Under the pieces are notes generated by a model that made no database searches, had not been told where the DNA came from, and saw only the letters and a list, made by a program, of their open reading frames with translations. This document shows, piece by piece, positions 33,701 to 51,799 of a stretch of 64,000 nt of DNA (the stretch's first letter is position 1; every line of letters begins with the position of its first letter). Source of the stretch: Phallusia mammillata. Its lineage: Eukaryota. The stretch lies in assembly GCA_965637545.1 (NCBI GenBank), contig OZ281497.1:5890001-5954000 (forward strand). The letters are read 5' to 3'. Position numbers and translations under genes: made by a program.

Positions 33701-36700
33701 TCTGCCAGATGATCGACGCTTTTCGAAACCCCACTCACTAAGTAAAAATTGATTTTTTAATGTAAAAAGTGGCTACGGTAATTGTCTGAGCTGGAGCTAC
33801 CAAATACCCATGAACCAACCAACCAATGAACATTATTAACTGCAAATATAAGGTAAACACACAAAATAGGAAACCTGACAATTTTTTTCAGTTGACGACT
33901 AAGTATCAGGTTACCATGTCGGAAAGAGGGAAAACCCCTTCGAATCCCTGATCAAACTGAAAGTTGTCGAGATCGATATGACATTCGCCCAGATAGCTGT
34001 CGGTTTCATTGGCATCTGCCACTATAAGCACGATGTACCTGCAAATACAAAATAAACAAATCAATCCAATTTTTCAGAAATATAACGGAAACATCAATTT
34101 TGCGATTTCTGTTTTATTGTACATTTTTTTTTTGCTTTTAAAACATGTTTTTCAATTTTTTTATCATTTTAAAATATGAATTCCTTTATTATTTTGAAGT
34201 TTTGAACATTTTCAGAAGGCGCTAATCTCATTAAACAGTGCAGTAAATTAATGGAAACAGGAAAATTATTTCGTTATTTTACCACTATACTTTAAACACA
34301 AAGTACACAAAACTTTTGCAAAACCAAAACAACAACAACAACACTTTAGGTGCTTTAATTACCTGCTGTTCAGTTCTTCTTTTGGTACAGGAAAATCGAA
34401 GGATTCATTCCATTCCGGACTACCAGTTCTTTCTTTGCATGGCCATGTTTTGTACACGTAAGGTACACCAGGAATGTATACGCGCACGAATCTAAAGATG
34501 ATAGGTGGATAGCAACAACTTAAAATTAAAACCACATGTCCAGAAAAAATGCAACAGAAAATGCAACTTGATTTCAAACACCTTGGAACTGCAATAATAG
34601 GTTAGTTTCTTGAACACTATCATATAGGGCAGTGGTTCTCAAACTTTTTTTGTTGCGACGCCCCTGGACAAGTTTTTCTGGACTTGCGACGCACCAGCAA
34701 ATAAAAGTTAATGAGGAAACTTATTATTAAAATTGTGTTTATTGATACAACAACAAAAAGCCACGAAACGGAACTATTCTGCGACGCCCTTGGAAAATTG
34801 AAACGACGCACCAGGGCGTCGCGACGCCCAGTTTGAGAACTACTGATATAGGGTGATAAGGTAATCAGTAAATTTACGAAACTTTCTATCAAACGCATCG
34901 CTTTTGGCGTAAACTACATGCAATAATGTTTGTAACGCAAGGTTTTCCATTTTAAGCAAAGATTTAGAGAGACCATGGTGGAGTTCTATCTCAAATTAGC
35001 AATTACCAGAAGAGCTCTACAAAGTTGATATTATGCCTGGCAGCAACAGCTTATATATAGTTTTTTCGTTTTGTGGTTGTTTTGGTATTTTCTTGAAATA
35101 TATATTTTTTAAATAAACTTCCACTTACGGCTCTACATCGTCGTTGTCGATACGAATTCCTTTTGCTCCTTCGATGATGACATTAAGTGTTTGGGGCAAT
35201 TTGTAGTTGAGCTTGATTCCAACGTTTCCTCCGATGGTTAGATCAACCTTTGTTTAAAATGAACGGTGTCTTAAACTTTTGTCAACAGTTACAATACAAC
35301 ATGGTCTTATGGCATGATTTTACAAATAGGTCAAGTCATGAAAAATGTTTCGCAAAAATCAAGAAATGAGCAACTGCCAAAGTAGCCAGAGATGCACAAA
35401 GTAGGTTTTATTTTTATGGAATTCAAAAATGATGCACGGTTATTTCAAAGATCTTTTTTTTCACAATGAACATAACGTAAGGCAAGGAGTTTGTCAACCA
35501 TTTTACTTTATTATTAACTCTTACATTATTATTTTTTAAAGAGAGGCTATTTGTCAAGATCTCATGTGTTGTATAGTGAGTAGTTATTATTTACTATGGT
35601 AAGAAACCTTGACCTAAAAATAGGCGAAATGTGTGTTTTGTTTACAATGAAGAAAAATGTTGTACTTTTAATTGCTTAAAATGGAAAAAAACGACCTAAA
35701 AATTGAAAAGGTTAAAACTTTTAAAGGTTAATATCAGTTTTTAGTTTTTACAATATTAAAAATGATATTTTTTTAAAAGTTAAAAAAATGAAGTTGTATC
35801 CAATACAATCCACATTTACATGGCCAGTGTTTTTTTTAAGGTGTTTTGGGGGACCGAAACGGTCCCCCAAATTTCTCCAGCGGTTTCCCAAATAAGCAAA
35901 AATGACTATTTTTTGGTATTTAAATGAAACACTTGCGGTCTCTTAAAACTACTTAGCGGTCACCCAAACCAAACCTTAAAAAAAAACCTGTACATGGCTA
36001 TGTTGAAGTAAGCAATAACAGGTAAACAACGTATGACCAGAATCAGAATGTACCAACACGTATTTTACATTCGGACAAACAGACGGGCAGTGGGTACCAG
36101 AAAAACAATAATCACCGCAGCAGCAGCTCACCGTGTGAAAATTTTTCAAGATACCATCTTCATACAATTCACACAAAGACGCGAAATAGACGGAATGTGC
36201 TTTATACCCAATCCCTATTACGCCCAGAACTATATGATCCATAATTTATAGCTCTGGCCGGTAAATGCGGTTGCTATCAGCCCATCAGCAGCCCCCGCAA
36301 GGTTATTTGTAGGACAAATCGGCCCACAATGTCCTCTGTATCCAGAGTAAACATGAGAACATTGGTGAGTTGTACCCACAGGCATGTGGAAATGGATTTC
36401 CGGCTAAGTATTGTGACGGAATAATGGGGCGGAGGCCGGTTGCCTGATTGATGATTTTGGGGTTGGGAACGGTTACGTTATACATTACGTAATTTTTGTT
36501 GAAACGGGAGATTTGTGAAATGTCGAAATCTGGTAAAAATATTACTTTAAAATCTTGTACTGTTAGGAAGTTTTAAAATGTCAGATCCAGACAGTTTTAG
36601 GGGTTATTTAAAAAAGTCTCAAAAAAAAATATTTAAACACCAATTTTTCAAAAAAAAATCACTTATTGCACAAACACGATTCGGTTCTAAAAAAAGGAAT

Positions 36701-41177: not shown

Positions 41178-41519
41178 CATTATCGTAAACATGAACATTA
41201 TTAAGTTGTGGGAAATAATAGTGTATGGCTCTGATGAGTGTATGTTTTTACCATCAGGGTGACCGAAAAAATCTTGGTTGCATTGTGTTAAATAACACTC
41301 TGCCCTCTTAACCTACTGGGACATAGCAAGCCACCTAACATTTTTGTAGCATTCAAAATCATAGTCAATGCTAACACAATGTGTTTAATGTGATAAAACA
41401 TTTCTGTCAAAATGTAGGTTGTTTCAATTGTAAAAATATACTAAAAGTTGCACTTAAAAAATAACCGCCTATTGTGTATTTTTGTGATGTACTTCTGATC
41501 ATAATTTTGTAAATGTGAT

Positions 41520-41522
<3 letters not shown>

Positions 41523-41571
<49 letters not shown>
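41523..41571. repeat. (AT)n microsatellite, ~24 units
   Basis: Uninterrupted ATAT run just upstream of the acceptor preceding the first coding exon of the winged-helix gene. Confidence 0.97.
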
Positions 41572-41575
<4 letters not shown>

Positions 41576-41657
41576 TTTTTTGAGCTGCATTTGAAATCAA
41601 ACTCTTTATTCTCCAGGAAAGTTTAGTGTAGGTATGTCATAACATTGAGTTGAAACA

Positions 41658-44600
41658 ATGTGTGACATTTGTGTGGCAATTGCCAAACAGCTTTTCCACC
41701 CTGAACTGAAGTATGCAGATGTCATTGCAAGCTTCAGGAATTTGTCAAATGAAAAAAGGGAAGAGGTGGGTTTGACTTTGACTTGACCACTAGTTTAAAT
41801 ATACCTAGTTAACTCTTTATGTTGTAAACCACTTTTGCACACAATCAGAGCTATTATCTTAAATGGTTTGTGTTCTATTGATTTTAAGCAGTTTTGTTTT
41901 TACTCAAACACATTTACAAGTGTTTTGAAGCAACCTGTTTACTGTTTTTTTGTACTGTTTACTGTTTTTTTGTACATTAACTGATATATGGCTTTGAAAA
42001 ACATTTTTCGTTTGAAGCAACCAGTCTAGCTAACACATTTATTGTTAGCTTTTGTCTCAGTTGTTAGGTTTGTACCTGGTCAATTGTACCCAACAATTTA
42101 GTAGTAACAATAAAATCTCACTTCTTTTTGCCTAGTAAAGAGATTACCAAATCATGTTTGGTACAGCAGTCTGTCGTTTATGGCTTAACAGAACATATTG
42201 TACTCTGAACGCATTAACTCGTGCAGAGTTTCCTTTTCTTGAACAAACTTTGTTTCTGTGCCTTAGTATATGGGATGTACTTTTAGATAATTAAAAAATA
42301 AACTCAAGTACAAATGCGAAGTTTTGCAGAATGTATACTGCTGCTGGCTCCATAATGTTTCCAAACAAAACATCGATGATGTGTTTATATTAACCAAAAT
42401 ATTTGATACAAGTTATATGCCATTTATTTAATATTTCCTAATTTATGATATATATTTCGGGAATTGCATTTATCCCAGCTACCCCAGCATTTTATGTGTC
42501 AGAAACGTTAGTTTGGTACAGAGACAGCACCCATAGCAATAAATGTTGTTGTGATTTAACTTCGTTGATGTCAGTTAAGCTGTGGCAATTATAGTTAGTC
42601 CAAAACGACAGTCCGTTTTTGGTCATTGACCTAAAAAGTGTGTAATGTGTATGATGTATACGGGAAAAGATGCCATCGGAAATTACTATTTTCCTGTTGC
42701 GTTAGCCATCTTCCTGTGTTCACACGCACGCAAATCACGTTTGGTGCACATATGTGCGCAGTGAAGCTTTCCTAAAGAATGTATTTTCTTCCCAAAATAA
42801 CCTACGCACGGCGTTATTGAAATTAGTGCGCCGAAAAGCATTTCCAAACAATTTTGTAGCGAGTTTTAAAATAGTTATTAATAATCACGGATTGCGCAAA
42901 AAGGAAAGTTTCTGAATCCAATTATTTTCCCCTACTCGTGTCTGATAATTATTTGCTGCGGTAAATAATAAAATTATGTGACGAATCTGTCTTGTCATTG
43001 AAAAAGTTCTTACAGGGCATGTCGTTACCGTGCTATTAATCACCTGAGTGATTTCCCACAGAAAGGTTATGAGCAACGGAGCAAGTACTTACCGCTTAGC
43101 GACCTATAAAGACCGCTTTTAAAACATGATGAAAGATAAACCATATTCAACACCGCCTTACCGACACGTTTTCCACGGGAAGTATTACTAACATCACAAA
43201 GTATTTGCTGTCGCTTGTCATTCGATATAAAGTTGTAATATTGATTACAAGATGTTCATGCTGCTCTACTTATATTTTCGCCTATATCTCCTGTACCCCT
43301 AGGGCCATCTTGTATATTAAGATCAGAATGTCGGTATTTTAATTCTTTACAGATGTGACACATCAGGGCAGAAATTGGTAATTATTTGACGCTCTCACAA
43401 CTATCGAGGTTAATTCCGTGACCCATTAACATGTTCTCATTAACTAACTTTTAAACCGCGGTACTGTGTTTAAAGAACAACACAAATGTCCTACAAAAAA
43501 AAAACTTTCTTGCAGATGCTGTTAAAATTTAAACAACCATTGATATGGCGACATAGTCATTACATGATTTTTGTTAGTGTTCAGCCTATATATTATCGTT
43601 TTTTCACACGACCAATACCTAAATAAAAGTGCGGACGAATTTGGCATGTTTTCCACGTCGGGTATGAACTAAACGCTAAAACTTGCATTTGTGAGCTGCA
43701 GCGTGTAAAACTCTTGGTTTGACAATTGTTAAAAAAACATATTGAGGCAATATGATCTGTACTTTTGAATCCCAAATATTCAAAAAAAGTTGAATCCCAC
43801 CAAAAAATTAAGTGGCTTGGGGTAATTAATTGAACACCCCTCGATGGTCTTTTGCAGCCTGATAGATTTTTGCAATTATAGGAATGTCAGGATCGTTTAT
43901 TGTATGGTCTTGTCTTAATTGTTAATGGTCCTGTCTTGTATTCACATTAGAAGCATATTAACTAATTCTATTAGGTAGTGCAACATTTTAATTTGGGCAT
44001 TCTTTGCATGGAAGCGGTGTAAAGTGAAATAATTTGCATCACTTTTATGTTTGTGCACTGCAAGTTGTTGAGAGCTCCAAGGCAAATTACCCATCCCGAA
44101 CCGGTTTTGCGCGACACCTAAACATTTTCTTTGACACGCCCTATGGCTGTTATCTTACACATTTAGTACGTTAATTGTTCTGAATCAGCATTTTTTTGGT
44201 GGCTATTACAGAAAATAACACAGGTTGTAAACTGTAAACTCCGGTTAGGGTTTTTAAGTTTATCTAATTTACGGATTGTGTCGGGTTCGAATAGTTCTCA
44301 ACCGGTGCGCGCCTTCGGATTCAGTTCGGGTTCGACTTCTGGGTTTAGCTACGCAGTTTGGTATTTCGTTATCGGGAGGAAAGCGACTAAGGCGACGCAA
44401 ATTGGTTACGTGAATGCATTTATACAACTATTGAGCAACTGTGAAACAGTTATTATTTTTTTTTTTGGACATACGTTTTAAAAATTTTGTCTTTTGACAT
44501 ATCAGTGTTGTAGGAGCGCATTTTAATCTAACGCAATGAAACGATTTTACGCATCTTGGCACCATCGTCCATAAAAAAGGTTATCTTACAAACAAAAAAA

Positions 44601-47600
44601 GACCAGATTTGCCGTTGTTTTTGTATTTCTCGATAGTTTGAGTCTATATAGACAAATTAACATAGGTTTTGTAATCTGCGGGATGATTATATAAGCCACA
44701 AAATGCAAACAGATTACACAGGCGACTCCGGCTGACAGGAAGTTGTTATATAGGCGTTTTGTTCCGGATAAACTTTACCACGGTATACGACATTGGTTTA
44801 AACACTGGCCTCTTGTTTTTATAACGTCAAAATTTGCGCTTTGTTTTCGAGATGCTTGAAAAAAGCTTGAGATTTACTTTTAGTTAGTATTTGCGGCAAA
44901 TAAATGCCAACACAAACACACAAAAATGTCAAATTTGTTTTTACATGACGCCAATATTACTTATGCCGAAACGTCTGAAACCTAATTCTTCAAATCAGGA
45001 TTAAGGGACCTAATTTTCCGTAGATTTATCTTTGTAAAATCACCTTCCTGTTAAAAGTAAAATGAATACAATATCATTGAACTATTTGATTTTGGTACAA
45101 GACTATTTGAAAGGTTATGAATTCATATATGAATGTAATTTCAGCAGAAAAATCGGTATATCGAAAAATAAAAATAAAAAATTGACCAAACTAAGATAAT
45201 ACAAAAAGCAAAATGTAAGGTGTGCCTATATTTTGTTTTTGCAGATCTCCTCCAAACATGGATCGTTCGTTGATTGGATCACATCCACTTGTAACCAGTT
45301 GGACAACAAAGACGCAGTTGATTTTACGTATCTCGTTCACAAGGTCATCAGGGAAAAGATCAGTTTGGGACTAACAGCTATTGGGACATTAAAAATTTCT
45401 GAAATTCAATGCAGCTTGATGCATACCACTGGTTTTGTTTCCGAAAGTTTGCTTAAAAGGGTTTTGAATGAGTTTCCCGAGTTTAAAATCGCACGCGAGG
45501 GTCATGACGAGGTTGTCAAGCTTAAAAGCGAATCCTCGCCCTCGAAGAAAATCTCTATTTCACTCCCGGACTTAAAAACGTGTTCTCCATCAAATAAAGC
45601 AAGCCAAATTAAGGCATTGTTTCGCAATCACCCAGATGTTGTTGCGTGCTTAGGTAAACATGTTACATGGGACGTCGTCAACAAGTCGTACCTCTTTTGG
45701 AAAGGACACTGCGGGAATTCCAGCACAAACTTTACAGATTGGCTGACAAGTATGGCAAATTCTCATTCACCGCGTCTTTATCCCGAGTACATCAAGGCTT
45801 TACGTCTGTGCTTTTTAAAACAATGCATGAACTTTATCCAAGCCAAGTCGCGTACAGTTAGGGAGATTAGAGACAACTTAACTATATCTAAAGCTGACCT
45901 TACCTCTGACAGCTTCATATACGAAGCTTGTAAAGATTCTGACTTGATGACTGTTACAATACCAAGTAATTCAATGCTGTTGTGCAAATACGTTGTAAGC
46001 ATTGTAGGCAAAGATACTGCGGTATCCGAACCTCTGACAAAAAGCTCAGTTTCTACGACAAAATCCTCTGGTACAGTTGCAGTTTCGACGCCTCGCGGGG
46101 AATCGTCTGATAATAATCGATTTCCATTTTTCATCTCTGCAACTTTTCTGAGAAAGATTATTCCACTGCTTTCTTGCAAAGTTCTGTGCACGTCTCTTAT
46201 TAGCACTTACCAATCTCTTGTAAATGAAGACGCGCACGTTGTTGATAGCTGGTTGTCTCGGTACGGGTGCTTTCTTGAATTTTTGCTACAATTCTGTAAG
46301 TACCATAAAAAGGCAATCAACTTAGAGATGTACAACGATGCTTTGGTGAACCAATTGAAAATCATAATCTGCCAGAAGTTGTATGCAGTTGAATCTCACA
46401 CCTTACCATGGTCAGAACTAATCGAAAATCTTGCACCAAAAGGCTTCGCGGATTCAAAGTTTATTTACAAAACAGTGCAGGCCAATGCCTCTCGTTTTGC
46501 CGTTGTTAATTCCAATGTTATTCTAATCGATGATAGAAAGGCCCAACAACAACTAAAAGATAACGAAATGTTCACAAGTCTTCTTAAGCACCCGCCGTTG
46601 CAGAAGTTGTGCAACGTTGACATTGAGTTCCGTGATTTTTTTGATACTTACCATACGTTATCAGTGAAAGAGAAGGAGTTTCTGGCCTCAAACAACTTTA
46701 GTTTTGTGTTTCTAGTGAAGGAGGTCTTCAAATTGCACCATCCAGATCAGTACTACTTTTACCGCAAACACCTAAACACTTTAATATTTGGTCAGCTGCT
46801 TGACTTAGTTCAATCTCGACACAAGATCCACATTACTCAGGCACAGCAGATTATCACACTGGGCAATTTTGATTTAATTAGCTGCCAAGAACTTCTCGCA
46901 TCAATGCGAATAATGCCTTCCAAAATCCGAGTAGTTGAGGACGAATTGTTCTTGTCTGATCTGGGGCCATCAAACCAGAGCGGCAGTAGCATGGAAGCAG
47001 TACCGATGGACCATCTTGCACAAGCTGTCCGAGGTATTTTTATGAGTCAGAACACCATAGATGGGCGAATTGCTGGGTTGTTACAACTTGACAATACAAT
47101 GCAAGAACACCTAAGAGATTTTGTTATCTTAAGGTATGGCACTCTCTGCCAATTTATCAGCTGCATTTGCGAAGACCGTGGAATTTTTCGTGCCAGTGTT
47201 GAGCATAAGGTTGCTGAGTATCTGAACGGAAGGAGCATGTTTCTTGAGGAGCTTTTGAGGCATCTTTTTGGCTTGAGGCCTTCTTTTATGAGCGAACGGG
47301 ACCTCTTAGAAATGCTCAGTCCGGTCAAGTTCGTGGCCTTAAACCACGCGAATGGAACGTTGGTTTCAGAAGTACGAAGTGCTGTACACGGAAAAGTGAG
47401 ATACTTTGATGAAAGTGAAAAAATGATTGTTGAAACAGTTCTGTCTCTCTTTACTCGCCAGTCTATTACTCTTTCCTTTGACTACACGTACAACAGAATC
47501 TGCAGCTCTAAGCATTTTACCAGGGTTCAACGGTTGTTCCTTTTTGGAAAACCCGAGGGAGAACTGGACAACCACTTAAGTGAAGTTTATTTTCGTCGCT

Positions 47601-50600
47601 TTTTGCTCATTTTCCCGACTATGTTTAGAATACTGGAAAGTGATGAAGTAGTGATCGGTGGTCGGTCTTTATCGCGTCGTTCTAGGTCAAGAAGCAACAG
47701 CGTTGGACCATTAGAAAGGTCACCACAAAAAGGCTGTGAATCTGAGCGCGAGAGTGGAGAAGTGACCGAAGAAGAGGACAATGAAAAATCGCCTTCCAAG
47801 CGCCACAGTAAAAAGCGAACCAACGCCAAGAAAGATGAAATCAAGGCAAAGAGACGCAGAATTAAGTTTAAGTCTCGCCGAGAGATTCGCAGAAATAAAG
47901 AAAGGTCTGCGAATGAGTCCGAATCAGGAGCATTACACGATACCATTATGTCTTTGCCAAATAATCTTGTTCAAGACGTGACTATGGGTCGTTTGCTTGC
48001 CTCCGAAAACAACCAAATGCGTTTAAACACATTAATCGATTGTTTGATGTCAAGTCTCCTGAATGAAACACAAAGAGTGCAGATTACAGAACAAGATTAT
48101 TTGAGATCGGTTTTTCAAAAGAAAGTTCTCGAATGTTTGTCCACCGCGGAACAAGTTCAATTATTGGATTCGGGAGATGAAGCTACAAAGACGGTAAGAC
48201 TTGTTTTAAAGCAGCAGGCAAAGATGGACGTTGTACAAGATTCAAGTGTGGCCATTTATCGTCACGTCTCCAGCTTGACCGGAGTTACAAGCAAGGAGCT
48301 GGCCGTATTTATCAAGTGAGTTAGTAGGCCTAGTAGCCTGCGTAGAGTTAAAAACTAAATCATCCCCTGGCTAAAAAAATATGCTACAATAAAAAGTTCA
48401 AACTTAATGCACGCTAGAAAGAATGCGTTTGGTGGCGCACAACATGCTGGTTAAATACACAAAAGAATTTTTTTTACAACCTTTACATGATGGGTTCCTA
48501 AGGTAACAAATAGGAATTGAATAGAGTTGACCCTGGTATTTCTTCGTCAGGCTCTAAACTAGAAGATGAGTCTAAAACAAATACCTCACTGTACACTGGC
48601 TAATTATTGTGTCGCGATATTAATTTTAAACAGTTAATGCTTCGAGAAAAAATAGAATGATTTTAATTGCAGTAGGACATTTTTTGCTCTCGAACACCAA
48701 CACTATTTTACTTGGTCAATTTCTAACCTATTCGACATGCCTTGCTGTAATTACGTCAAACACTTCGGCATGCCATGCAGTAAAAACGTAAAAGAATTGT
48801 CCAATAGATCACTTTCCATTAGTATTGCATGTTTTAAATGAACCCACTTCATTCTTTTGCGAGTCACCTTTCTTTGCAGGGCGTTGTTATCGATTCAGGG
48901 CGCGGAGCTTGACCTTGACACTGTTGTAAATGTTTCGCGTCGAAAGTATGGCAAAAGAAGCGCGTTCCCGAATCTATCCGATGACGTCATAGCATGTCAA
49001 GTCATGGAATGTTTGAAAAAAAGTTCTGAAATATTTATCAATGCAATTGAGGCAACTTGCTCTCTCCGCGAAGAACAAGGGGATCCTAAGAATCAGTTTG
49101 GGCTGAACAATTGTTTGGAAAATGTTTGTGAAAAAGAGATTGCGGATTTTATCACAGGATGTCTTGACGTATGTATTAAGTTCTTGCTTTTTTAAGTTAT
49201 CAAAATGACTTGCAATAGTATTTTGCAATATTTAAGATTGCAATAGTGTTTCTATAAAACAATTTGTTCATGTAGCAATGTAAACGCTAAATAGAATTTC
49301 GTTTTTAACTTCATACATTAAAATGTTTATCATTACGTTGAAACTGCTGTATTAGCTTGCATTTCATTTGCTAACTCGTCCTGTCCAATGAACTGCCACA
49401 AAGACAGTAAAATTTGTTGCATTATTGGCCCCTGACAGAAGACCTTACGCACATAGGAAACGAATTAATTTTGTTTTGTAAAATGCTTTTAAACAGGCCC
49501 CTTATCTTACCATTATAACATAGAAAATTTTGTTTGCTTACTACCTTACTTTTTAAACTTAAGCTTATTACCTTACTTGTAAGAAACCAAAGGGAATAAA
49601 GAACGACTGTTTCACTCTTTCCAGGAAAAATTGCACAATTCCGGAATTTCCTGGAAAAATTTGCTCGTTGAGGTTTCTAACTACTTTGAAACACGCCTTG
49701 GCTCCGTATCACCAACAACTTTGAAATTGATTGTGCAAAGTATTGTTCCTGGTATTGAAACAGTTGGGTTCACAGTTGCTGGAAAAGTAGCCAGACTACA
49801 GGAAAATGTTCCAGGTAATGAAAACTTTTTCCAACAAAATTTAGTTTATTATTTTGTTATGTGGTCAAATTAATAAAATTACGTGACAATAAGGGAAACC
49901 ATTGAGAACAAGTTACTACAAAGAAAACAAACCACTGTCAGACGTTTGATGTTCTATGGGAGAAATTGGCTTGTTAATAAATAAAAGACCGCTATTAACC
50001 AAACAATAGCTTATATTTTCTCTACATATATACATATGTTGTAATGTTTGGATGGTATGAAACGCATATTAATATATAGCAGGAGTGTGCCATTTATTTT
50101 ACATTTTCGAAGCTACACTACCGAACGTGCGTAGCTTTTTAAATAGAGGCCACAAAAAATAGTCTGTGTCGTAGGTTTGTATCTCAACCCAAGCAGACTT
50201 CAACTATTTTTTGTAACCGCGAAGTGAATTGATTTAGTTAGTCTATACATTTTATCCGCACTACATTTAGATCGGGACGGTACCTTGCCCTTGGATAAGA
50301 GTGAGAATGAACAAAAGCCCGAAGAGAAAGTGGAACAAGCAGTTGTAACTCAAACTGTTGAAACCGTGGAAGAATTATCGACCAGGCCAGAGGAGAGTGG
50401 CGTCATTCGACTGGATCCAAAAGACCAAAACGACACGCGACAACCTTCGGACGCGACACGCGACAAAACTGATTCTAGTTTCATGCCAAATGGTGAAATC
50501 GACATTTCAGATGTTATAACCAGTGTTAGGCAAAAAACAACCAACGATACTGCTGAAGCGCCCACGGAGAAATTGGTTTCTACAAACGCGGTAGAGGCTA

Positions 50601-51586
50601 AGTCCCCAGAACAACAACATGTAGTTTCATGCAGTCGAGAGGCAGTTCAAGATGTTAGGCGGGCCAAGCGAATTGAGCGCCATGAAAAAATCTTTGGGTT
50701 CTTGGTTGCGTATCTCTCATGCAAAAACTTCTGCTCAGAAACTGTGGATGTTTTAATGGCCGCCGGACGAGAGTTTTCCAATGAGCGATTCGCGCGCAGC
50801 CCTTTGGCAATGGAAGCGTACATACGCGAATTCGTGGCTTTCTCGGGGAATTTGTTTGCGTTTGGAAACCGCTGTGGAGACGTAGGTGTGTCGTGGATTT
50901 TCTACAGGCCCCACTGTGCACGAAATGCAATCACTAGCACGCCTAGTCTGCCTTTGCTTGAAATCATGCAAGACTTAGTGGAAGCTCTGCAGGTCCACCT
51001 GCTAACTAAACCAAATAGAAGAGACTCTCTCGCTAAACTGTGCAATATGGTTGTCCGCCGTTTTGCAGACAACCTAGCTGTTATACAAGAAACCGAGCGA
51101 CTACCCATCTGTCGTACGTTGGTTCTTTTGGGTTGTATACGGAATTTAGATAAATTTATATTCTCAAAATCTGCAATGTCCATTGGCCTTCGTATGGAAA
51201 CTTTGAGTAAGACTATTCAATCTCTTGTCACCCCGTTAACACCATTGTCCCCCGCGAGGCGTCCGTCTACAGAAGAGCTGGAGCAACCTTTACCAGTTCC
51301 CAGGCCAATACCGCTTCGTGCAAAGGCGAAAAGCAAAACAGTACAGCGCAACGAAGAAGCCATTAAACTGGTCGCCGAGATACTTCACAATAACGGACCC
51401 TGCACCAAAACCGAGCTACGCGATTTTTGGTCACGTGATGCTCCTGATGACTTACGCAAGGTTCTCGGTACCGGAGTATCTTTTCTCTTCGATTTACGCA
51501 AGTTCGAGCAATACTTTCCAACTTCAGAAGACGGTAAGGTGGAACTGAACGACATTGAGTTTCAGAGGTTTCTCTTGCAAATATGA
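41658..51586 (+). CDS. Large uncharacterised protein (~1657 aa) with ~10 winged-helix / LOTUS(OST-HTH)-like repeats and a central RS/basic-acidic region; 5 coding exons
   Basis: Exons: 41658-41765 (MCDICVAIAK...KREE, upstream in-frame TGA), 45245-48315 (acceptor ttttgcag|ATC; donor AA|gtgagt pre-empts the ORF-track stop), 48880-49168, 49625-49814, 50271-51586. They total 4974 nt and all phases join. The exon structure is solid; the domain call is pattern recognition only. Confidence 0.85.
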
Positions 51587-51799
51587 TGATGGTCAAGTTG
51601 TGATAGGTTGTCGTAAGGGATCATTACTTTAATGCCAGTGAAACATATACCATTTTAGTGCCATACCGTGACAAGTGATCTTGCTCAAAGTAAGTGTTAA
51701 ACCTAAGGTACAAAAAACGTATGCTAAAATTGTTGCCAAGTTTGCAATAAATGTATCGTGCTTTTTTGTTATGTTGCCAAAATAGGTGTTGTATTTTGT

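What the first reader, a model, noticed from the sequence alone, without database searches (positions are those of the whole stretch)
41658..51586. Orphan-looking 1657-aa protein built from ~10 winged-helix/LOTUS-like repeats with no catalytic domain
Seen: units of ~120-150 aa recur in the N-terminal two-thirds. Each has a 'Y/HGxF/LxxF/WI' helix (KHGSFVDWI, STNFTDWLT, RYGCFLEFL, NNFSFVFLV, RYGTLCQFI). This is followed by a helix-helix-helix-hairpin segment ending 'xxxPxxFxVxxxxVxL' (LLKRVLNEFPEFKIAREGHDEVVKL; FIYKTVQANASRFAVVNSNVILI; LLASMRIMPSKIRVVEDELFL; FRRFLLIFPTMFRILESDEVVI). Further single units follow, the last being AIKLVAEILHNNGPCTKTELRDFW..LRKVLGTG..LRKFEQYFPTSEDGKVEL. Established: this pattern typifies LOTUS/OST-HTH and Egalitarian-type winged helices of germ-plasm and RNA-granule scaffolds (Oskar, TDRD5/7, MARF1), which normally carry Tudor, NYN or exonuclease domains; none is visible here. 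Inference: a lineage-specific multivalent RNA- or Vasa-binding scaffold, or a multi-wHTH nucleic-acid binder.
Basis: partly seen in the sequence, partly recalled or inferred. Interest (0 to 1): 0.7.

Follow-up and report, generated by a model that had tools for sequence, protein, structure and literature searches.

The report
Sea-squirt protein of twelve winged helices
This is a real, spliced and expressed sea-squirt gene for a 1657-residue protein made almost only of about twelve winged-helix domains, several like the RNA-binding domains of fly Egalitarian and of LOTUS proteins, with no enzyme domain. It belongs to a fast-evolving, unstudied family whose only named members are sea-squirt proteins.

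Summary
RNA-like contigs from three studies confirm three of the four splice junctions. The five exons give exactly 1657 aa.

AlphaFold2 models with small family alignments fold ten segments as winged helices (wH), with segment pLDDT of 80-97. Two more, across exons 2-4, are inferred from sequence only.

The first five wH each follow a small helical bundle. These five are true internal repeats (profile-profile E 2e-8 to 1e-4). The other seven are not detectably alike in sequence.

W6, W7, C2 and C3 have the four-helix Egalitarian/LOTUS topology:
- W6 superposes on Egalitarian ED2 (Z 8.6, 2.4 A, 73 residues).
- C2+C3 superpose on ED1+ED2 (Z about 10).
- C3 matches the TDRD5 LOTUS domain (Z 8.4).
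- Pfam WH_Egal hits 9 of 18 family members weakly; only one passes the curated cut-off, and the window's own protein has no hit.

No catalytic domain is seen. An exhaustive HMMER search found 17 relatives at 31% identity or less. The only named ones are "uncharacterized" ascidian proteins.

A strongly basic, NLS-like cluster is kept between W6 and W7. This argues for a nuclear protein rather than a germ-granule scaffold.

Function is untested. My best guess is a non-enzymatic, multivalent nuclear scaffold that binds structured RNA and partner proteins.

The parts
41658..41765 (+). Exon 1: start codon and 36 codons, the N-terminal helix of the first module
   Evidence: ATG at 41658, GT at 41766. 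Peptide conserved in the Clavelina N-terminus, E 1e-9. Not covered by laid contigs; the contig lengths fit a spliced exon 1.
45245..48315 (+). Exon 2: 1023 codons holding W1-W7, four helical bundles and a basic disordered linker
   Evidence: Acceptor AG before 45245. Donor joint 48315>48880 in X1 and X2. AF2 model m6f92688651b2, mean pLDDT 75.9.
45305..45523 (+). W1, three-helix winged helix (exon-2 residues 21-93)
   Evidence: DSSP pattern H-E-H-H-E-E. Matches ESCRT-II, RPC34 and Z-alpha wH at Z 7.0-7.5. Homologous to W2-W5.
45587..46003 (+). Module 2: bundle B2 (residues 115-174) plus W2 (179-253)
   Evidence: W2 vs W4 E 3.8e-7; W2 vs W3 E 9.9e-7.
46139..46525 (+). Module 3: bundle B3 (residues 299-354) plus W3 (360-427)
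   Evidence: pLDDT about 90. W3 vs W4 E 2.3e-8; B3 vs B5 E 2.5e-6. Matches Vps25 tandem WH at Z 6.4.
46532..46954 (+). Module 4: bundle B4 (residues 430-498) plus W4 (500-570)
47000..47371 (+). Module 5: bundle B5 (residues 586-641) plus W5 (645-709)
   Evidence: W2 vs W5 E 1.1e-6; W1 vs W5 E 1.7e-6.
47411..47656 (+). W6, four-helix Egalitarian-domain-like winged helix (residues 723-804), carrying the most conserved motif of exon 2
   Evidence: Matches Egl ED2 (9rw7_D residues 93-167) at Z 8.6, rmsd 2.4 A, 73 aligned. The Pfam WH_Egal hits of homologues P0010, P0001 and P0002 map here.
47663..47911 (+). Disordered linker rich in RS and K/R (net charge +15), NLS-like
   Evidence: pLDDT < 50. 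Charge. The K/R cluster is kept at this position in most homologues.
47912..48202 (+). W7, four-helix winged helix (residues 890-986)
   Evidence: Matches at Z 8.6 to a 72-residue chain (residues 308-379) of human 80S ribosome entries, 7.7 to forkhead, 7.6 to MARF1 LOTUS 5yad_B. W6+W7 match Egl ED1+ED2 over 141-144 aligned residues.
48245..49066 (+). W8, inferred winged helix spanning the exon 2/3 junction (intron 48316-48879 inside)
   Evidence: Its first two helices are modelled at residues 1001-1022. The exon 3 part is conserved in 12 homologues. It was not folded, because that needs the joined sequence.
49130..49814 (+). W9, inferred winged helix spanning the exon 3/4 junction (intron 49169-49624 inside)
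   Evidence: Sequence pattern only. Junctions confirmed. No Pfam hit.
50271..50644 (+). Start of exon 5: acidic, poorly conserved linker (net charge -13)
   Evidence: This part was not folded; disorder is inferred from its composition and poor conservation.
50648..50920 (+). C1, winged helix (C-terminal model residues 2-92)
   Evidence: Model ma2ecf8a279f6, pLDDT 91-98. Matches MARF1 LOTUS at Z 7.9.
50957..51226 (+). C2, four-helix winged helix with a helix after the hairpin (model residues 105-194)
   Evidence: Matches cullin WHB at Z 8.5-8.7. Together with C3 it matches Egl ED1-ED2 at Z 9.5-10.1.
51335..51586 (+). C3, four-helix winged helix with a terminal helix (model residues 231-312), then the stop codon at 51584-51586
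   Evidence: Matches TDRD5 LOTUS 3s93_B at Z 8.4, rmsd 2.6 A, 72 of 81 residues. It contains 13 of the 30 invariant columns of alignment A3.

Best explanation
Shown:
- The gene encodes a 1657-aa, non-enzymatic protein built from about twelve winged-helix domains.
- Five homologous bundle-plus-wH modules come first, then W6, a basic disordered linker, W7-W9, an acidic linker, and a highly conserved C-terminal triple wH (C1-C3).
- It is spliced and present in transcriptome-like assemblies.
- It belongs to a fast-evolving family. The only named members are ascidian proteins, and the family expanded in some lineages.

Inferred:
- The conserved K/R cluster between W6 and W7 takes the protein into the nucleus.
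- The Egalitarian/LOTUS-like domains (W6, W7, C2, C3) bind structured RNA. By analogy, Egl ED1 and ED2 insert helix 2 into adjacent dsRNA minor grooves, and LOTUS domains bind G-rich or G4 RNA.
- The near-neutral N-terminal modules bind partner proteins.
- The whole protein would then work as a multivalent nuclear RNA-protein scaffold, not as an enzyme.

I hold the structural part at about 0.9 and the functional part at about 0.4. The confidence given here is for the functional part.
For: Gene model.

wH folds at high pLDDT. All top structural matches are winged helices.

Internal homology of W1-W5 and of the bundles.

Egl-like signal from two kinds of evidence:
- Pfam WH_Egal hits 9 of 18 members. 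One passes the cut-off at 29.8 bits against 27, and one search lists PF23713 as precomputed for it. Three of the hits map onto W6.
- Structure: W6 vs Egl ED2 at Z 8.6 and 2.4 A. C2+C3 vs Egl ED1-ED2 at Z about 10, and Egl is the top Foldseek hit at probability 0.96. C3 vs TDRD5 LOTUS at Z 8.4.

No catalytic family in the protein or in full-length homologues.

A basic cluster is conserved in position between W6 and W7.

RNA-binding roles of these domain types: PMC13186709 (Egl ED) and PMC7498356 (LOTUS).
Against: - There is no experimental or expression-pattern data.
- The window's own protein has no Pfam hit at all.
- Foldseek E-values are above 0.001.
- Single-domain Z scores of 7-9 are in the range the tool calls common, and many unrelated wH (forkhead, cullin WHB) tie with the LOTUS and Egl matches.
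- The wH units are near neutral or acidic, which is not typical of strong nucleic-acid binders.
- A K/R cluster can be a nucleic-acid-binding patch or a nucleolar signal rather than an NLS.
- W8 and W9 were not folded.
Confidence: 0.4

Rival explanations
1. Nuclear DNA- or chromatin-binding scaffold. The wH array would contact DNA or the transcription or replication machinery, as the multi-wH subunits of TFIIIC, RNA polymerase III (RPC82, RPC34), Cdt1 or ORC do.
For: - An NLS-like cluster is conserved.
- Foldseek's top rows for the exon-2 model are cullin, RPC82, TFIIIC, UFL1 and SelB.
- W7 matches forkhead domains at Z 7.7-8.1.
- W1 matches RPC34 and the TFIIIC tau138 eWH at Z 7.0-7.2.
Against: - None of those matches is significant or stands above the other wH matches.
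- The domains are near neutral, not basic like forkhead.
- There is no Pfam hit to B-block_TFIIIC or to any transcription-factor wH family.
- The only family-level sequence signal is WH_Egal.
Confidence: 0.2
2. Pure protein-protein scaffold. The winged helices would serve only as interaction modules, as in cullins, PCI proteins, ESCRT-II, UFL1 or kleisin partners, with no nucleic-acid binding.
For: - The wH and bundle units have neutral to acidic net charge.
- Bundle-plus-wH modules recall PCI and extended-wH modules.
- There are matches to ESCRT-II, UFL1, MukE/JetB and cullin WHB.
Against: - The WH_Egal signal and the Egl ED2 superposition point to a domain type shown to bind RNA.
- A strongly basic linker sits between W6 and W7.
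- The matches are as weak as those supporting the other readings.
Confidence: 0.2
3. One reading: a cytoplasmic germ-plasm or RNA-granule scaffold that recruits Vasa/DDX4 through eLOTUS-like domains.
For: - C2 and C3 have a helix after the beta hairpin, the feature that defines eLOTUS. eLOTUS binds Vasa (PMC7498356).
- C3 matches the TDRD5 LOTUS domain at Z 8.4.
Against: - No LOTUS Pfam match in any member.
- No Tudor domain.
- The conserved NLS-like cluster argues for a nuclear protein.
- No germline expression evidence is available here.
- The helix after the hairpin also occurs in many non-LOTUS wH.
Confidence: 0.1
4. An Egalitarian-like adaptor that selects structured localisation signals in mRNAs for transport, having lost or never had the exonuclease-like module.
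For: - Egl chains are the best Foldseek hit for the C-terminal model.
- They are the best VIA multi-domain hits for both models.
- WH_Egal hits occur in homologues.
- Ascidian eggs localise many maternal mRNAs (general knowledge).
Against: - There is no ExoHD-XAD module, which is needed for Egl RNA binding (PMC13186709).
- No similarity to the Egl BicD-binding N-terminus was found.
- No sequence match to Egl in PDB profile searches.
- The NLS-like cluster is present.
- The rmsd of about 14 A over two domains shows a different domain arrangement.
Confidence: 0.07

Closest known systems
Drosophila Egalitarian 'Egl domains' ED1-ED3 (Pfam PF23713 WH_Egal; PDB 9rvy, 9rw7 and others)
   Same: - Four-helix winged-helix topology.
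- W6 superposes on ED2 (Z 8.6, 2.4 A, 73 residues).
- W6+W7 and C2+C3 align to ED1+ED2.
- Weak WH_Egal profile hits in 9 of 18 family members.
   Different: - No exonuclease-homology or XAD module, and no detectable BicD-binding N-terminus.
- Twelve wH instead of three.
- The window's own protein does not match the Pfam model.
- The inter-domain geometry differs (rmsd about 14 A over two domains).
LOTUS/OST-HTH domain proteins (MARF1 with eight tandem LOTUS domains, TDRD5/7, Oskar)
   Same: - Tandem wH domains of the same topology.
- C3 vs TDRD5 LOTUS Z 8.4; W7 and C1 vs MARF1 LOTUS Z 7.6-7.9.
- C2 and C3 carry an eLOTUS-like terminal helix.
- The multivalent tandem layout recalls MARF1.
   Different: - No PF12872 match in any member.
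- No NYN, RRM or Tudor domains.
- The five N-terminal modules are three-helix wH with helical bundles, which is not LOTUS.
- A nuclear signal is likely.
Multi-wH scaffolds of other systems (TFIIIC tau138, RPC82, UFL1, cullin WHB, ESCRT-II, SelB)
   Same: Arrays of (extended) winged helices with helical inserts. These proteins fill the top of the Foldseek list for the exon-2 model.
   Different: All those matches have E >= 0.015 and TM <= 0.1 by query. No sequence-family match, and no shared accessory domains.

Membership tests
LOTUS / OST-HTH (PF12872) | Match to the Pfam profile | tested here: not met
   No PF12872 hit at E <= 1 in the five exon products or in any of the 18 members. None at E <= 10 in ten single units.
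LOTUS / OST-HTH (PF12872) | Winged helix with an extra helix before the recognition helix, giving four helices and a hairpin | tested here: met
   DSSP of the AF2 models shows this topology in W6, W7, C2 and C3. W1-W5 and C1 have only three helices. The four-helix description of the ED/LOTUS type rests partly on PMC13186709 and partly on my own knowledge.
LOTUS / OST-HTH (PF12872) | Closer in structure to solved LOTUS domains than to other winged helices | tested here: inconclusive
   TDRD5 3s93_B Z 8.4 and MARF1 5yad_B Z 7.4-7.9 tie with cullin WHB, forkhead and Z-alpha at Z 8-9.
LOTUS / OST-HTH (PF12872) | Binding of Vasa/DDX4 (eLOTUS) or of G-rich/G4 RNA | not testable with these tools
   Needs pull-down and RNA-binding assays. 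The properties are taken from PMC7498356.
Egalitarian winged helix (PF23713 WH_Egal) | Match to the Pfam profile above the gathering score | tested here: inconclusive
   The window's protein has no hit. Clavelina P0010 scores 29.8 bits against a cut-off of 27 (E 8.7e-7), summed over weak stretches. Eight further members score E 0.02-1.
Egalitarian winged helix (PF23713 WH_Egal) | Structural superposition on a solved Egl domain | tested here: met
   W6 vs Egl residues 93-167: Z 8.6, rmsd 2.4 A, 73 residues. Egl chains top both VIA lists for the C-terminal model.
Egalitarian orthologue | 3'-5' exonuclease homology domain plus XAD after the EDs | tested here: not met
   No exonuclease family in Pfam scans of the protein or its full-length homologues. 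All modelled segments are wH or helical bundles.
MARF1 / TDRD5 / TDRD7 | NYN nuclease and RRM domains (MARF1), or Tudor domains (TDRD5/7), beside the LOTUS domains | tested here: not met
   None found in Pfam scans of any exon product or homologue.

The most novel reading that the evidence does not exclude
Ascidians evolved their own multivalent reader of structured RNA. In this reading, a twelve-wH protein whose Egl/LOTUS-like domains recognise RNA shape organises nuclear or maternal RNPs. It would be a tunicate-specific counterpart of Egalitarian or MARF1-type scaffolds that works without any nuclease or Tudor module.
Probability: 0.15. Interest if true: 0.75.

Novelty: new variant of a known kind. 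Interest (0 to 1): 0.5.

Why it matters
Egalitarian-type winged helices were shown only in 2026 to be non-canonical dsRNA readers (PMC13186709). Their range outside Egl itself is little explored.

This family puts such domains into a very different, enzyme-free, twelve-domain architecture. It is found so far only in tunicates, the sister group of vertebrates, and it evolves fast and duplicates in some lineages. That makes it a tractable case of how a multivalent wH scaffold is built by internal duplication, here five bundle-wH modules.

It is also a candidate for unexplained RNA biology in ascidian embryos. Without functional data it remains a well-described unknown.

Tried and rejected
- **Word-index protein searches.** Three searches gave nothing useful: exon 2, the family alignment and the C-terminal region of the Clavelina protein, which found only itself. 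These blanks reflect the method. The exhaustive HMMER run found 17 relatives.
- **Self-BLASTP for repeats.** Nothing found. Profiles were needed.
- **An apparent W8-C3 homology** (E 5.6e-7). This was an artefact of a misaligned P0011 row in alignment A2. It vanished with the clean alignment A3 and is rejected.
- **Profile searches of PDB sequences** with A1 and A3. Only chance hits.
- **ESM Atlas.** Searches by features and by shape gave only generic HTH or HARE-HTH clusters below meaningful scores.
- **Rfam scan of the window.** Nothing.
- **Virus or mobile-element origin.** I considered this because several homologues sit on contigs of about 27-30 kb. I rejected it because those contigs are gene-sparse and show the same layout of a big exon followed by a C-terminal exon.
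- **Synteny with the window's neighbours.** None found in the fetched loci.
- **A second copy in the window.** None.
- **Literature search for LOTUS proteins in ascidians.** Nothing relevant.
Full report
**Setting.** The window is AT-rich animal DNA (GC 0.32-0.43). My own results fit that: the only named relatives of the protein are from the ascidians Clavelina lepadiformis and Styela clava.

**Gene model.**
- ORF listing shows a 1028-codon open frame at 45233-48319 and a 433-codon one at 50285-51586.
- I laid the contigs of four public runs on 45700-51699.
- Three small assemblies (X1, X2 and X9, 16-22 million letters) are flagged only as guessed RNA. They skip 48316-48879, 49169-49624 and 49815-50270, each with GT..AG ends.
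- The 205-million-letter assembly X15 is colinear with the genome.
- The contigs run unbroken through the stop codon at 51584-51586 and continue 460-760 nt beyond 51699, so no further coding exon follows.
- Exon 1 (41658-41765) lay outside the 6000 letters allowed. It has an ATG, a GT donor and a phase-0 fit to the AG acceptor before 45245.
- Its peptide matches the N-terminus of the annotated Clavelina protein (13/24 identical, E 1e-9).
- The upstream overhang of contigs X1 and X2 fits a spliced exon 1.
It was used only in local scripts, for frame, length and charge and to look for a second copy in the window. All searches and folds used single exons by reference.
- For the same reason the two units that span exon junctions (W8, W9) were not folded.

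**Relatives.**
- Pfam finds nothing in any exon product, and the word-index search is blank.
- The exhaustive phmmer run of exon 2 against 1.84 billion representatives found 17 proteins. Twelve have E < 1e-30, and all are at 31% identity or less.
- Two are RefSeq 'uncharacterized protein' entries, from Clavelina (1828 aa) and Styela (1452 aa). The rest are unnamed, from ENA, JGI and Logan assemblies.
- Their contigs are gene-sparse. They repeat the layout seen here: a very large exon followed a few kb later by a 414-535-codon C-terminal exon.
- That exon is 30-39% identical to exon 5 of the window.
- Some contigs carry two paralogues in tandem (L001).
- A quick maximum-likelihood tree gives three well-supported groups: Styela plus one unnamed row; Clavelina plus four; and the window's protein plus eight unnamed rows. 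Terminal branches are very long, with a median of 0.95 changes per site.
- The family is therefore real, conserved in architecture, fast-evolving, and expanded in at least one lineage.
- I cannot name the organisms behind the unnamed rows. 'Tunicate-restricted' therefore means only that no named non-tunicate member was found.

**Structure of exon 2.** AlphaFold2 on exon 2 with the 18-row family alignment gives mean pLDDT 75.9. Folded segments reach 80-95, and three segments are disordered. DSSP shows seven helix-strand-helix-helix-strand-strand units, in exon-2 numbering:

| Unit | Residues | Preceding bundle |
|---|---|---|
| W1 | 21-93 | exon 1 peptide plus helix 8-14 |
| W2 | 179-253 | B2, 115-174 |
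| W3 | 360-427 | B3, 299-354 |
| W4 | 500-570 | B4, 430-498 |
| W5 | 645-709 | B5, 586-641 |
| W6 | 723-804 | none |
| W7 | 906-986 (helix 890-902 precedes it) | none |

The 'PxxFxV..VxL' motif is helix 3 plus the wing.

**Structure of the C-terminus.** The last 313 residues of exon 5 were folded with a 9-row alignment. The model has mean pLDDT 83.8 and shows three more such units, C1, C2 and C3. Exons 3 and 4 have the sequence pattern of two further units, and the model of exon 2 ends with the first two helices of W8. Those two units are inferred only.

**Fold assignment.**
- VIA-align against 48,161 representative PDB chains returns only winged-helix domains in the top 50 for both models. 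They include forkhead, cullin WHB, ESCRT-II, RPC34, Z-alpha, MARF1 LOTUS and TDRD5 LOTUS, at Z 6-9, and most cover nearly the whole small domain.
- Foldseek gives no hit at E <= 0.001. Its lists are filled with multi-wH proteins for exon 2.
- For the C-terminal model, the recently released Egalitarian-BicD-RNA structures head the Foldseek list (9rwb_C, probability 0.96, E 0.011).

**Repeats as homology.** Plain self-BLAST is blank. I cut the family alignment into units and ran hhalign on all pairs.
- W1-W5 are related to each other over their full length (E 2.3e-8 to 1.5e-4, up to 94% probability).
- Bundles B3, B4 and B5 are related (E 2.5e-6 and 4.2e-5).
- All wH-versus-bundle pairs, which serve as controls, give E > 0.02.
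- W6, W7, W8 and C1-C3 show no convincing sequence relation to W1-W5 or to each other.
- An apparent W8-C3 hit came from a misaligned row and disappeared with a clean alignment.
- So the N-terminal 750 residues arose by five-fold duplication of a module of about 130-145 residues. The remaining seven wH are either older or too diverged to tell.

**Which kind of winged helix.**
- W1-W5 and C1 have the canonical three helices.
- W6, W7, C2 and C3 have a fourth helix before the recognition helix. The Egl paper describes this addition for Egl domains and likens it to LOTUS (PMC13186709).
- C2 and C3 also have a helix after the hairpin, the feature that separates eLOTUS from mLOTUS (PMC7498356).
- Sequence evidence: Pfam WH_Egal (PF23713) hits 9 of 18 family members at E <= 1. 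Only the Clavelina protein passes the gathering score (29.8 against 27 bits). The hits of three members map onto W6.
- Structural evidence: W6 superposes on Egl ED2 with Z 8.6, rmsd 2.4 A and 73 residues. W6+W7 and C2+C3 each align to ED1+ED2 over 141-148 residues at Z 8.4-10.1. C3 matches the TDRD5 LOTUS domain at Z 8.4.
- Limits: the window's own protein has no Pfam hit. The LOTUS Pfam model matches no member. The Z scores tie with unrelated wH. The rmsd of about 14 A over two domains shows a different domain arrangement.
- My reading: the domain type is Egl/LOTUS-like, but the protein is not an Egl, MARF1 or TDRD orthologue, because the defining accessory domains are absent.

**Clues to function.**
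- The wH and bundle units are near neutral, with net charge -5 to +4.
- The linker between W6 and W7 is disordered, has RS dipeptides, and carries net charge +15.
- A dense K/R cluster (10-14 of 20 residues) is kept at this position in most homologues, although its sequence is not conserved. In Clavelina it includes an SV40-like run of lysines.
- I read this as a nuclear localisation signal. It argues against a cytoplasmic germ-granule role.
- The C-terminal triple wH is the most conserved part, with 30 invariant columns among nine sequences. It is probably the functional core.
- By analogy with Egl ED1 and ED2, which place helix 2 into adjacent dsRNA minor grooves (PMC13186709), and with LOTUS domains, which bind G-rich or G4 RNA (PMC7498356), I propose a nuclear, non-enzymatic, multivalent scaffold for structured RNA and partner proteins.
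- This is inference. DNA binding, or purely protein-protein roles, are nearly as likely.

**Verdict.** The 'orphan' label is softened to a lineage-restricted, unstudied family, and the germ-plasm idea has no support. It is a new architecture of known domain types, of moderate interest until function is tested.

Noticed in passing
window 41518-41571 and 41634-41642: An (AT)26 microsatellite lies about 90 nt upstream of the start codon. A two-codon upstream ORF (ATG TCA TAA) sits in the probable 5' leader.
   Followed up: no
window 34359-34577, minus strand: An ORF fragment has a C2-domain-like motif (…PEWNESFDF…). It is probably an exon of the upstream, divergently transcribed neighbour.
   Followed up: no
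window 50348-50356: A TQT tripeptide, the core of dynein light chain LC8 binding motifs, lies in the acidic linker. It is not conserved in the homologues aligned, so it is probably chance.
   Followed up: partly
window 45975, 45978, 46201, 46324, 50400: The contigs of run X9 differ from the window at five coding positions. By my own arithmetic, three are at second codon positions, so they change the amino acid. This is polymorphism in a fast-evolving gene.
   Followed up: no
window 48599-48807: Run X1 has a separate 209-nt low-depth contig inside intron 2, laid on the minus strand. It may be unspliced precursor or an antisense fragment.
   Followed up: no
L001 87-3491 and 10001-14083; also the contigs shared by P0002/P0015 and by P0008/P0017: In the unnamed relatives, two family members lie in tandem on one contig. 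The tree shows an eight-member expansion sister to the window's gene.
   Followed up: partly
P0011 (1856 aa), region aligned to the W6-W7 linker: In this homologue the basic linker is expanded to about 510 residues, with 120 K/R.
   Followed up: no
L004 3265-4031: FAM200/ZBED5-like (transposase-derived) ORFs lie about 6 kb upstream of the homologue P0004.
   Followed up: no
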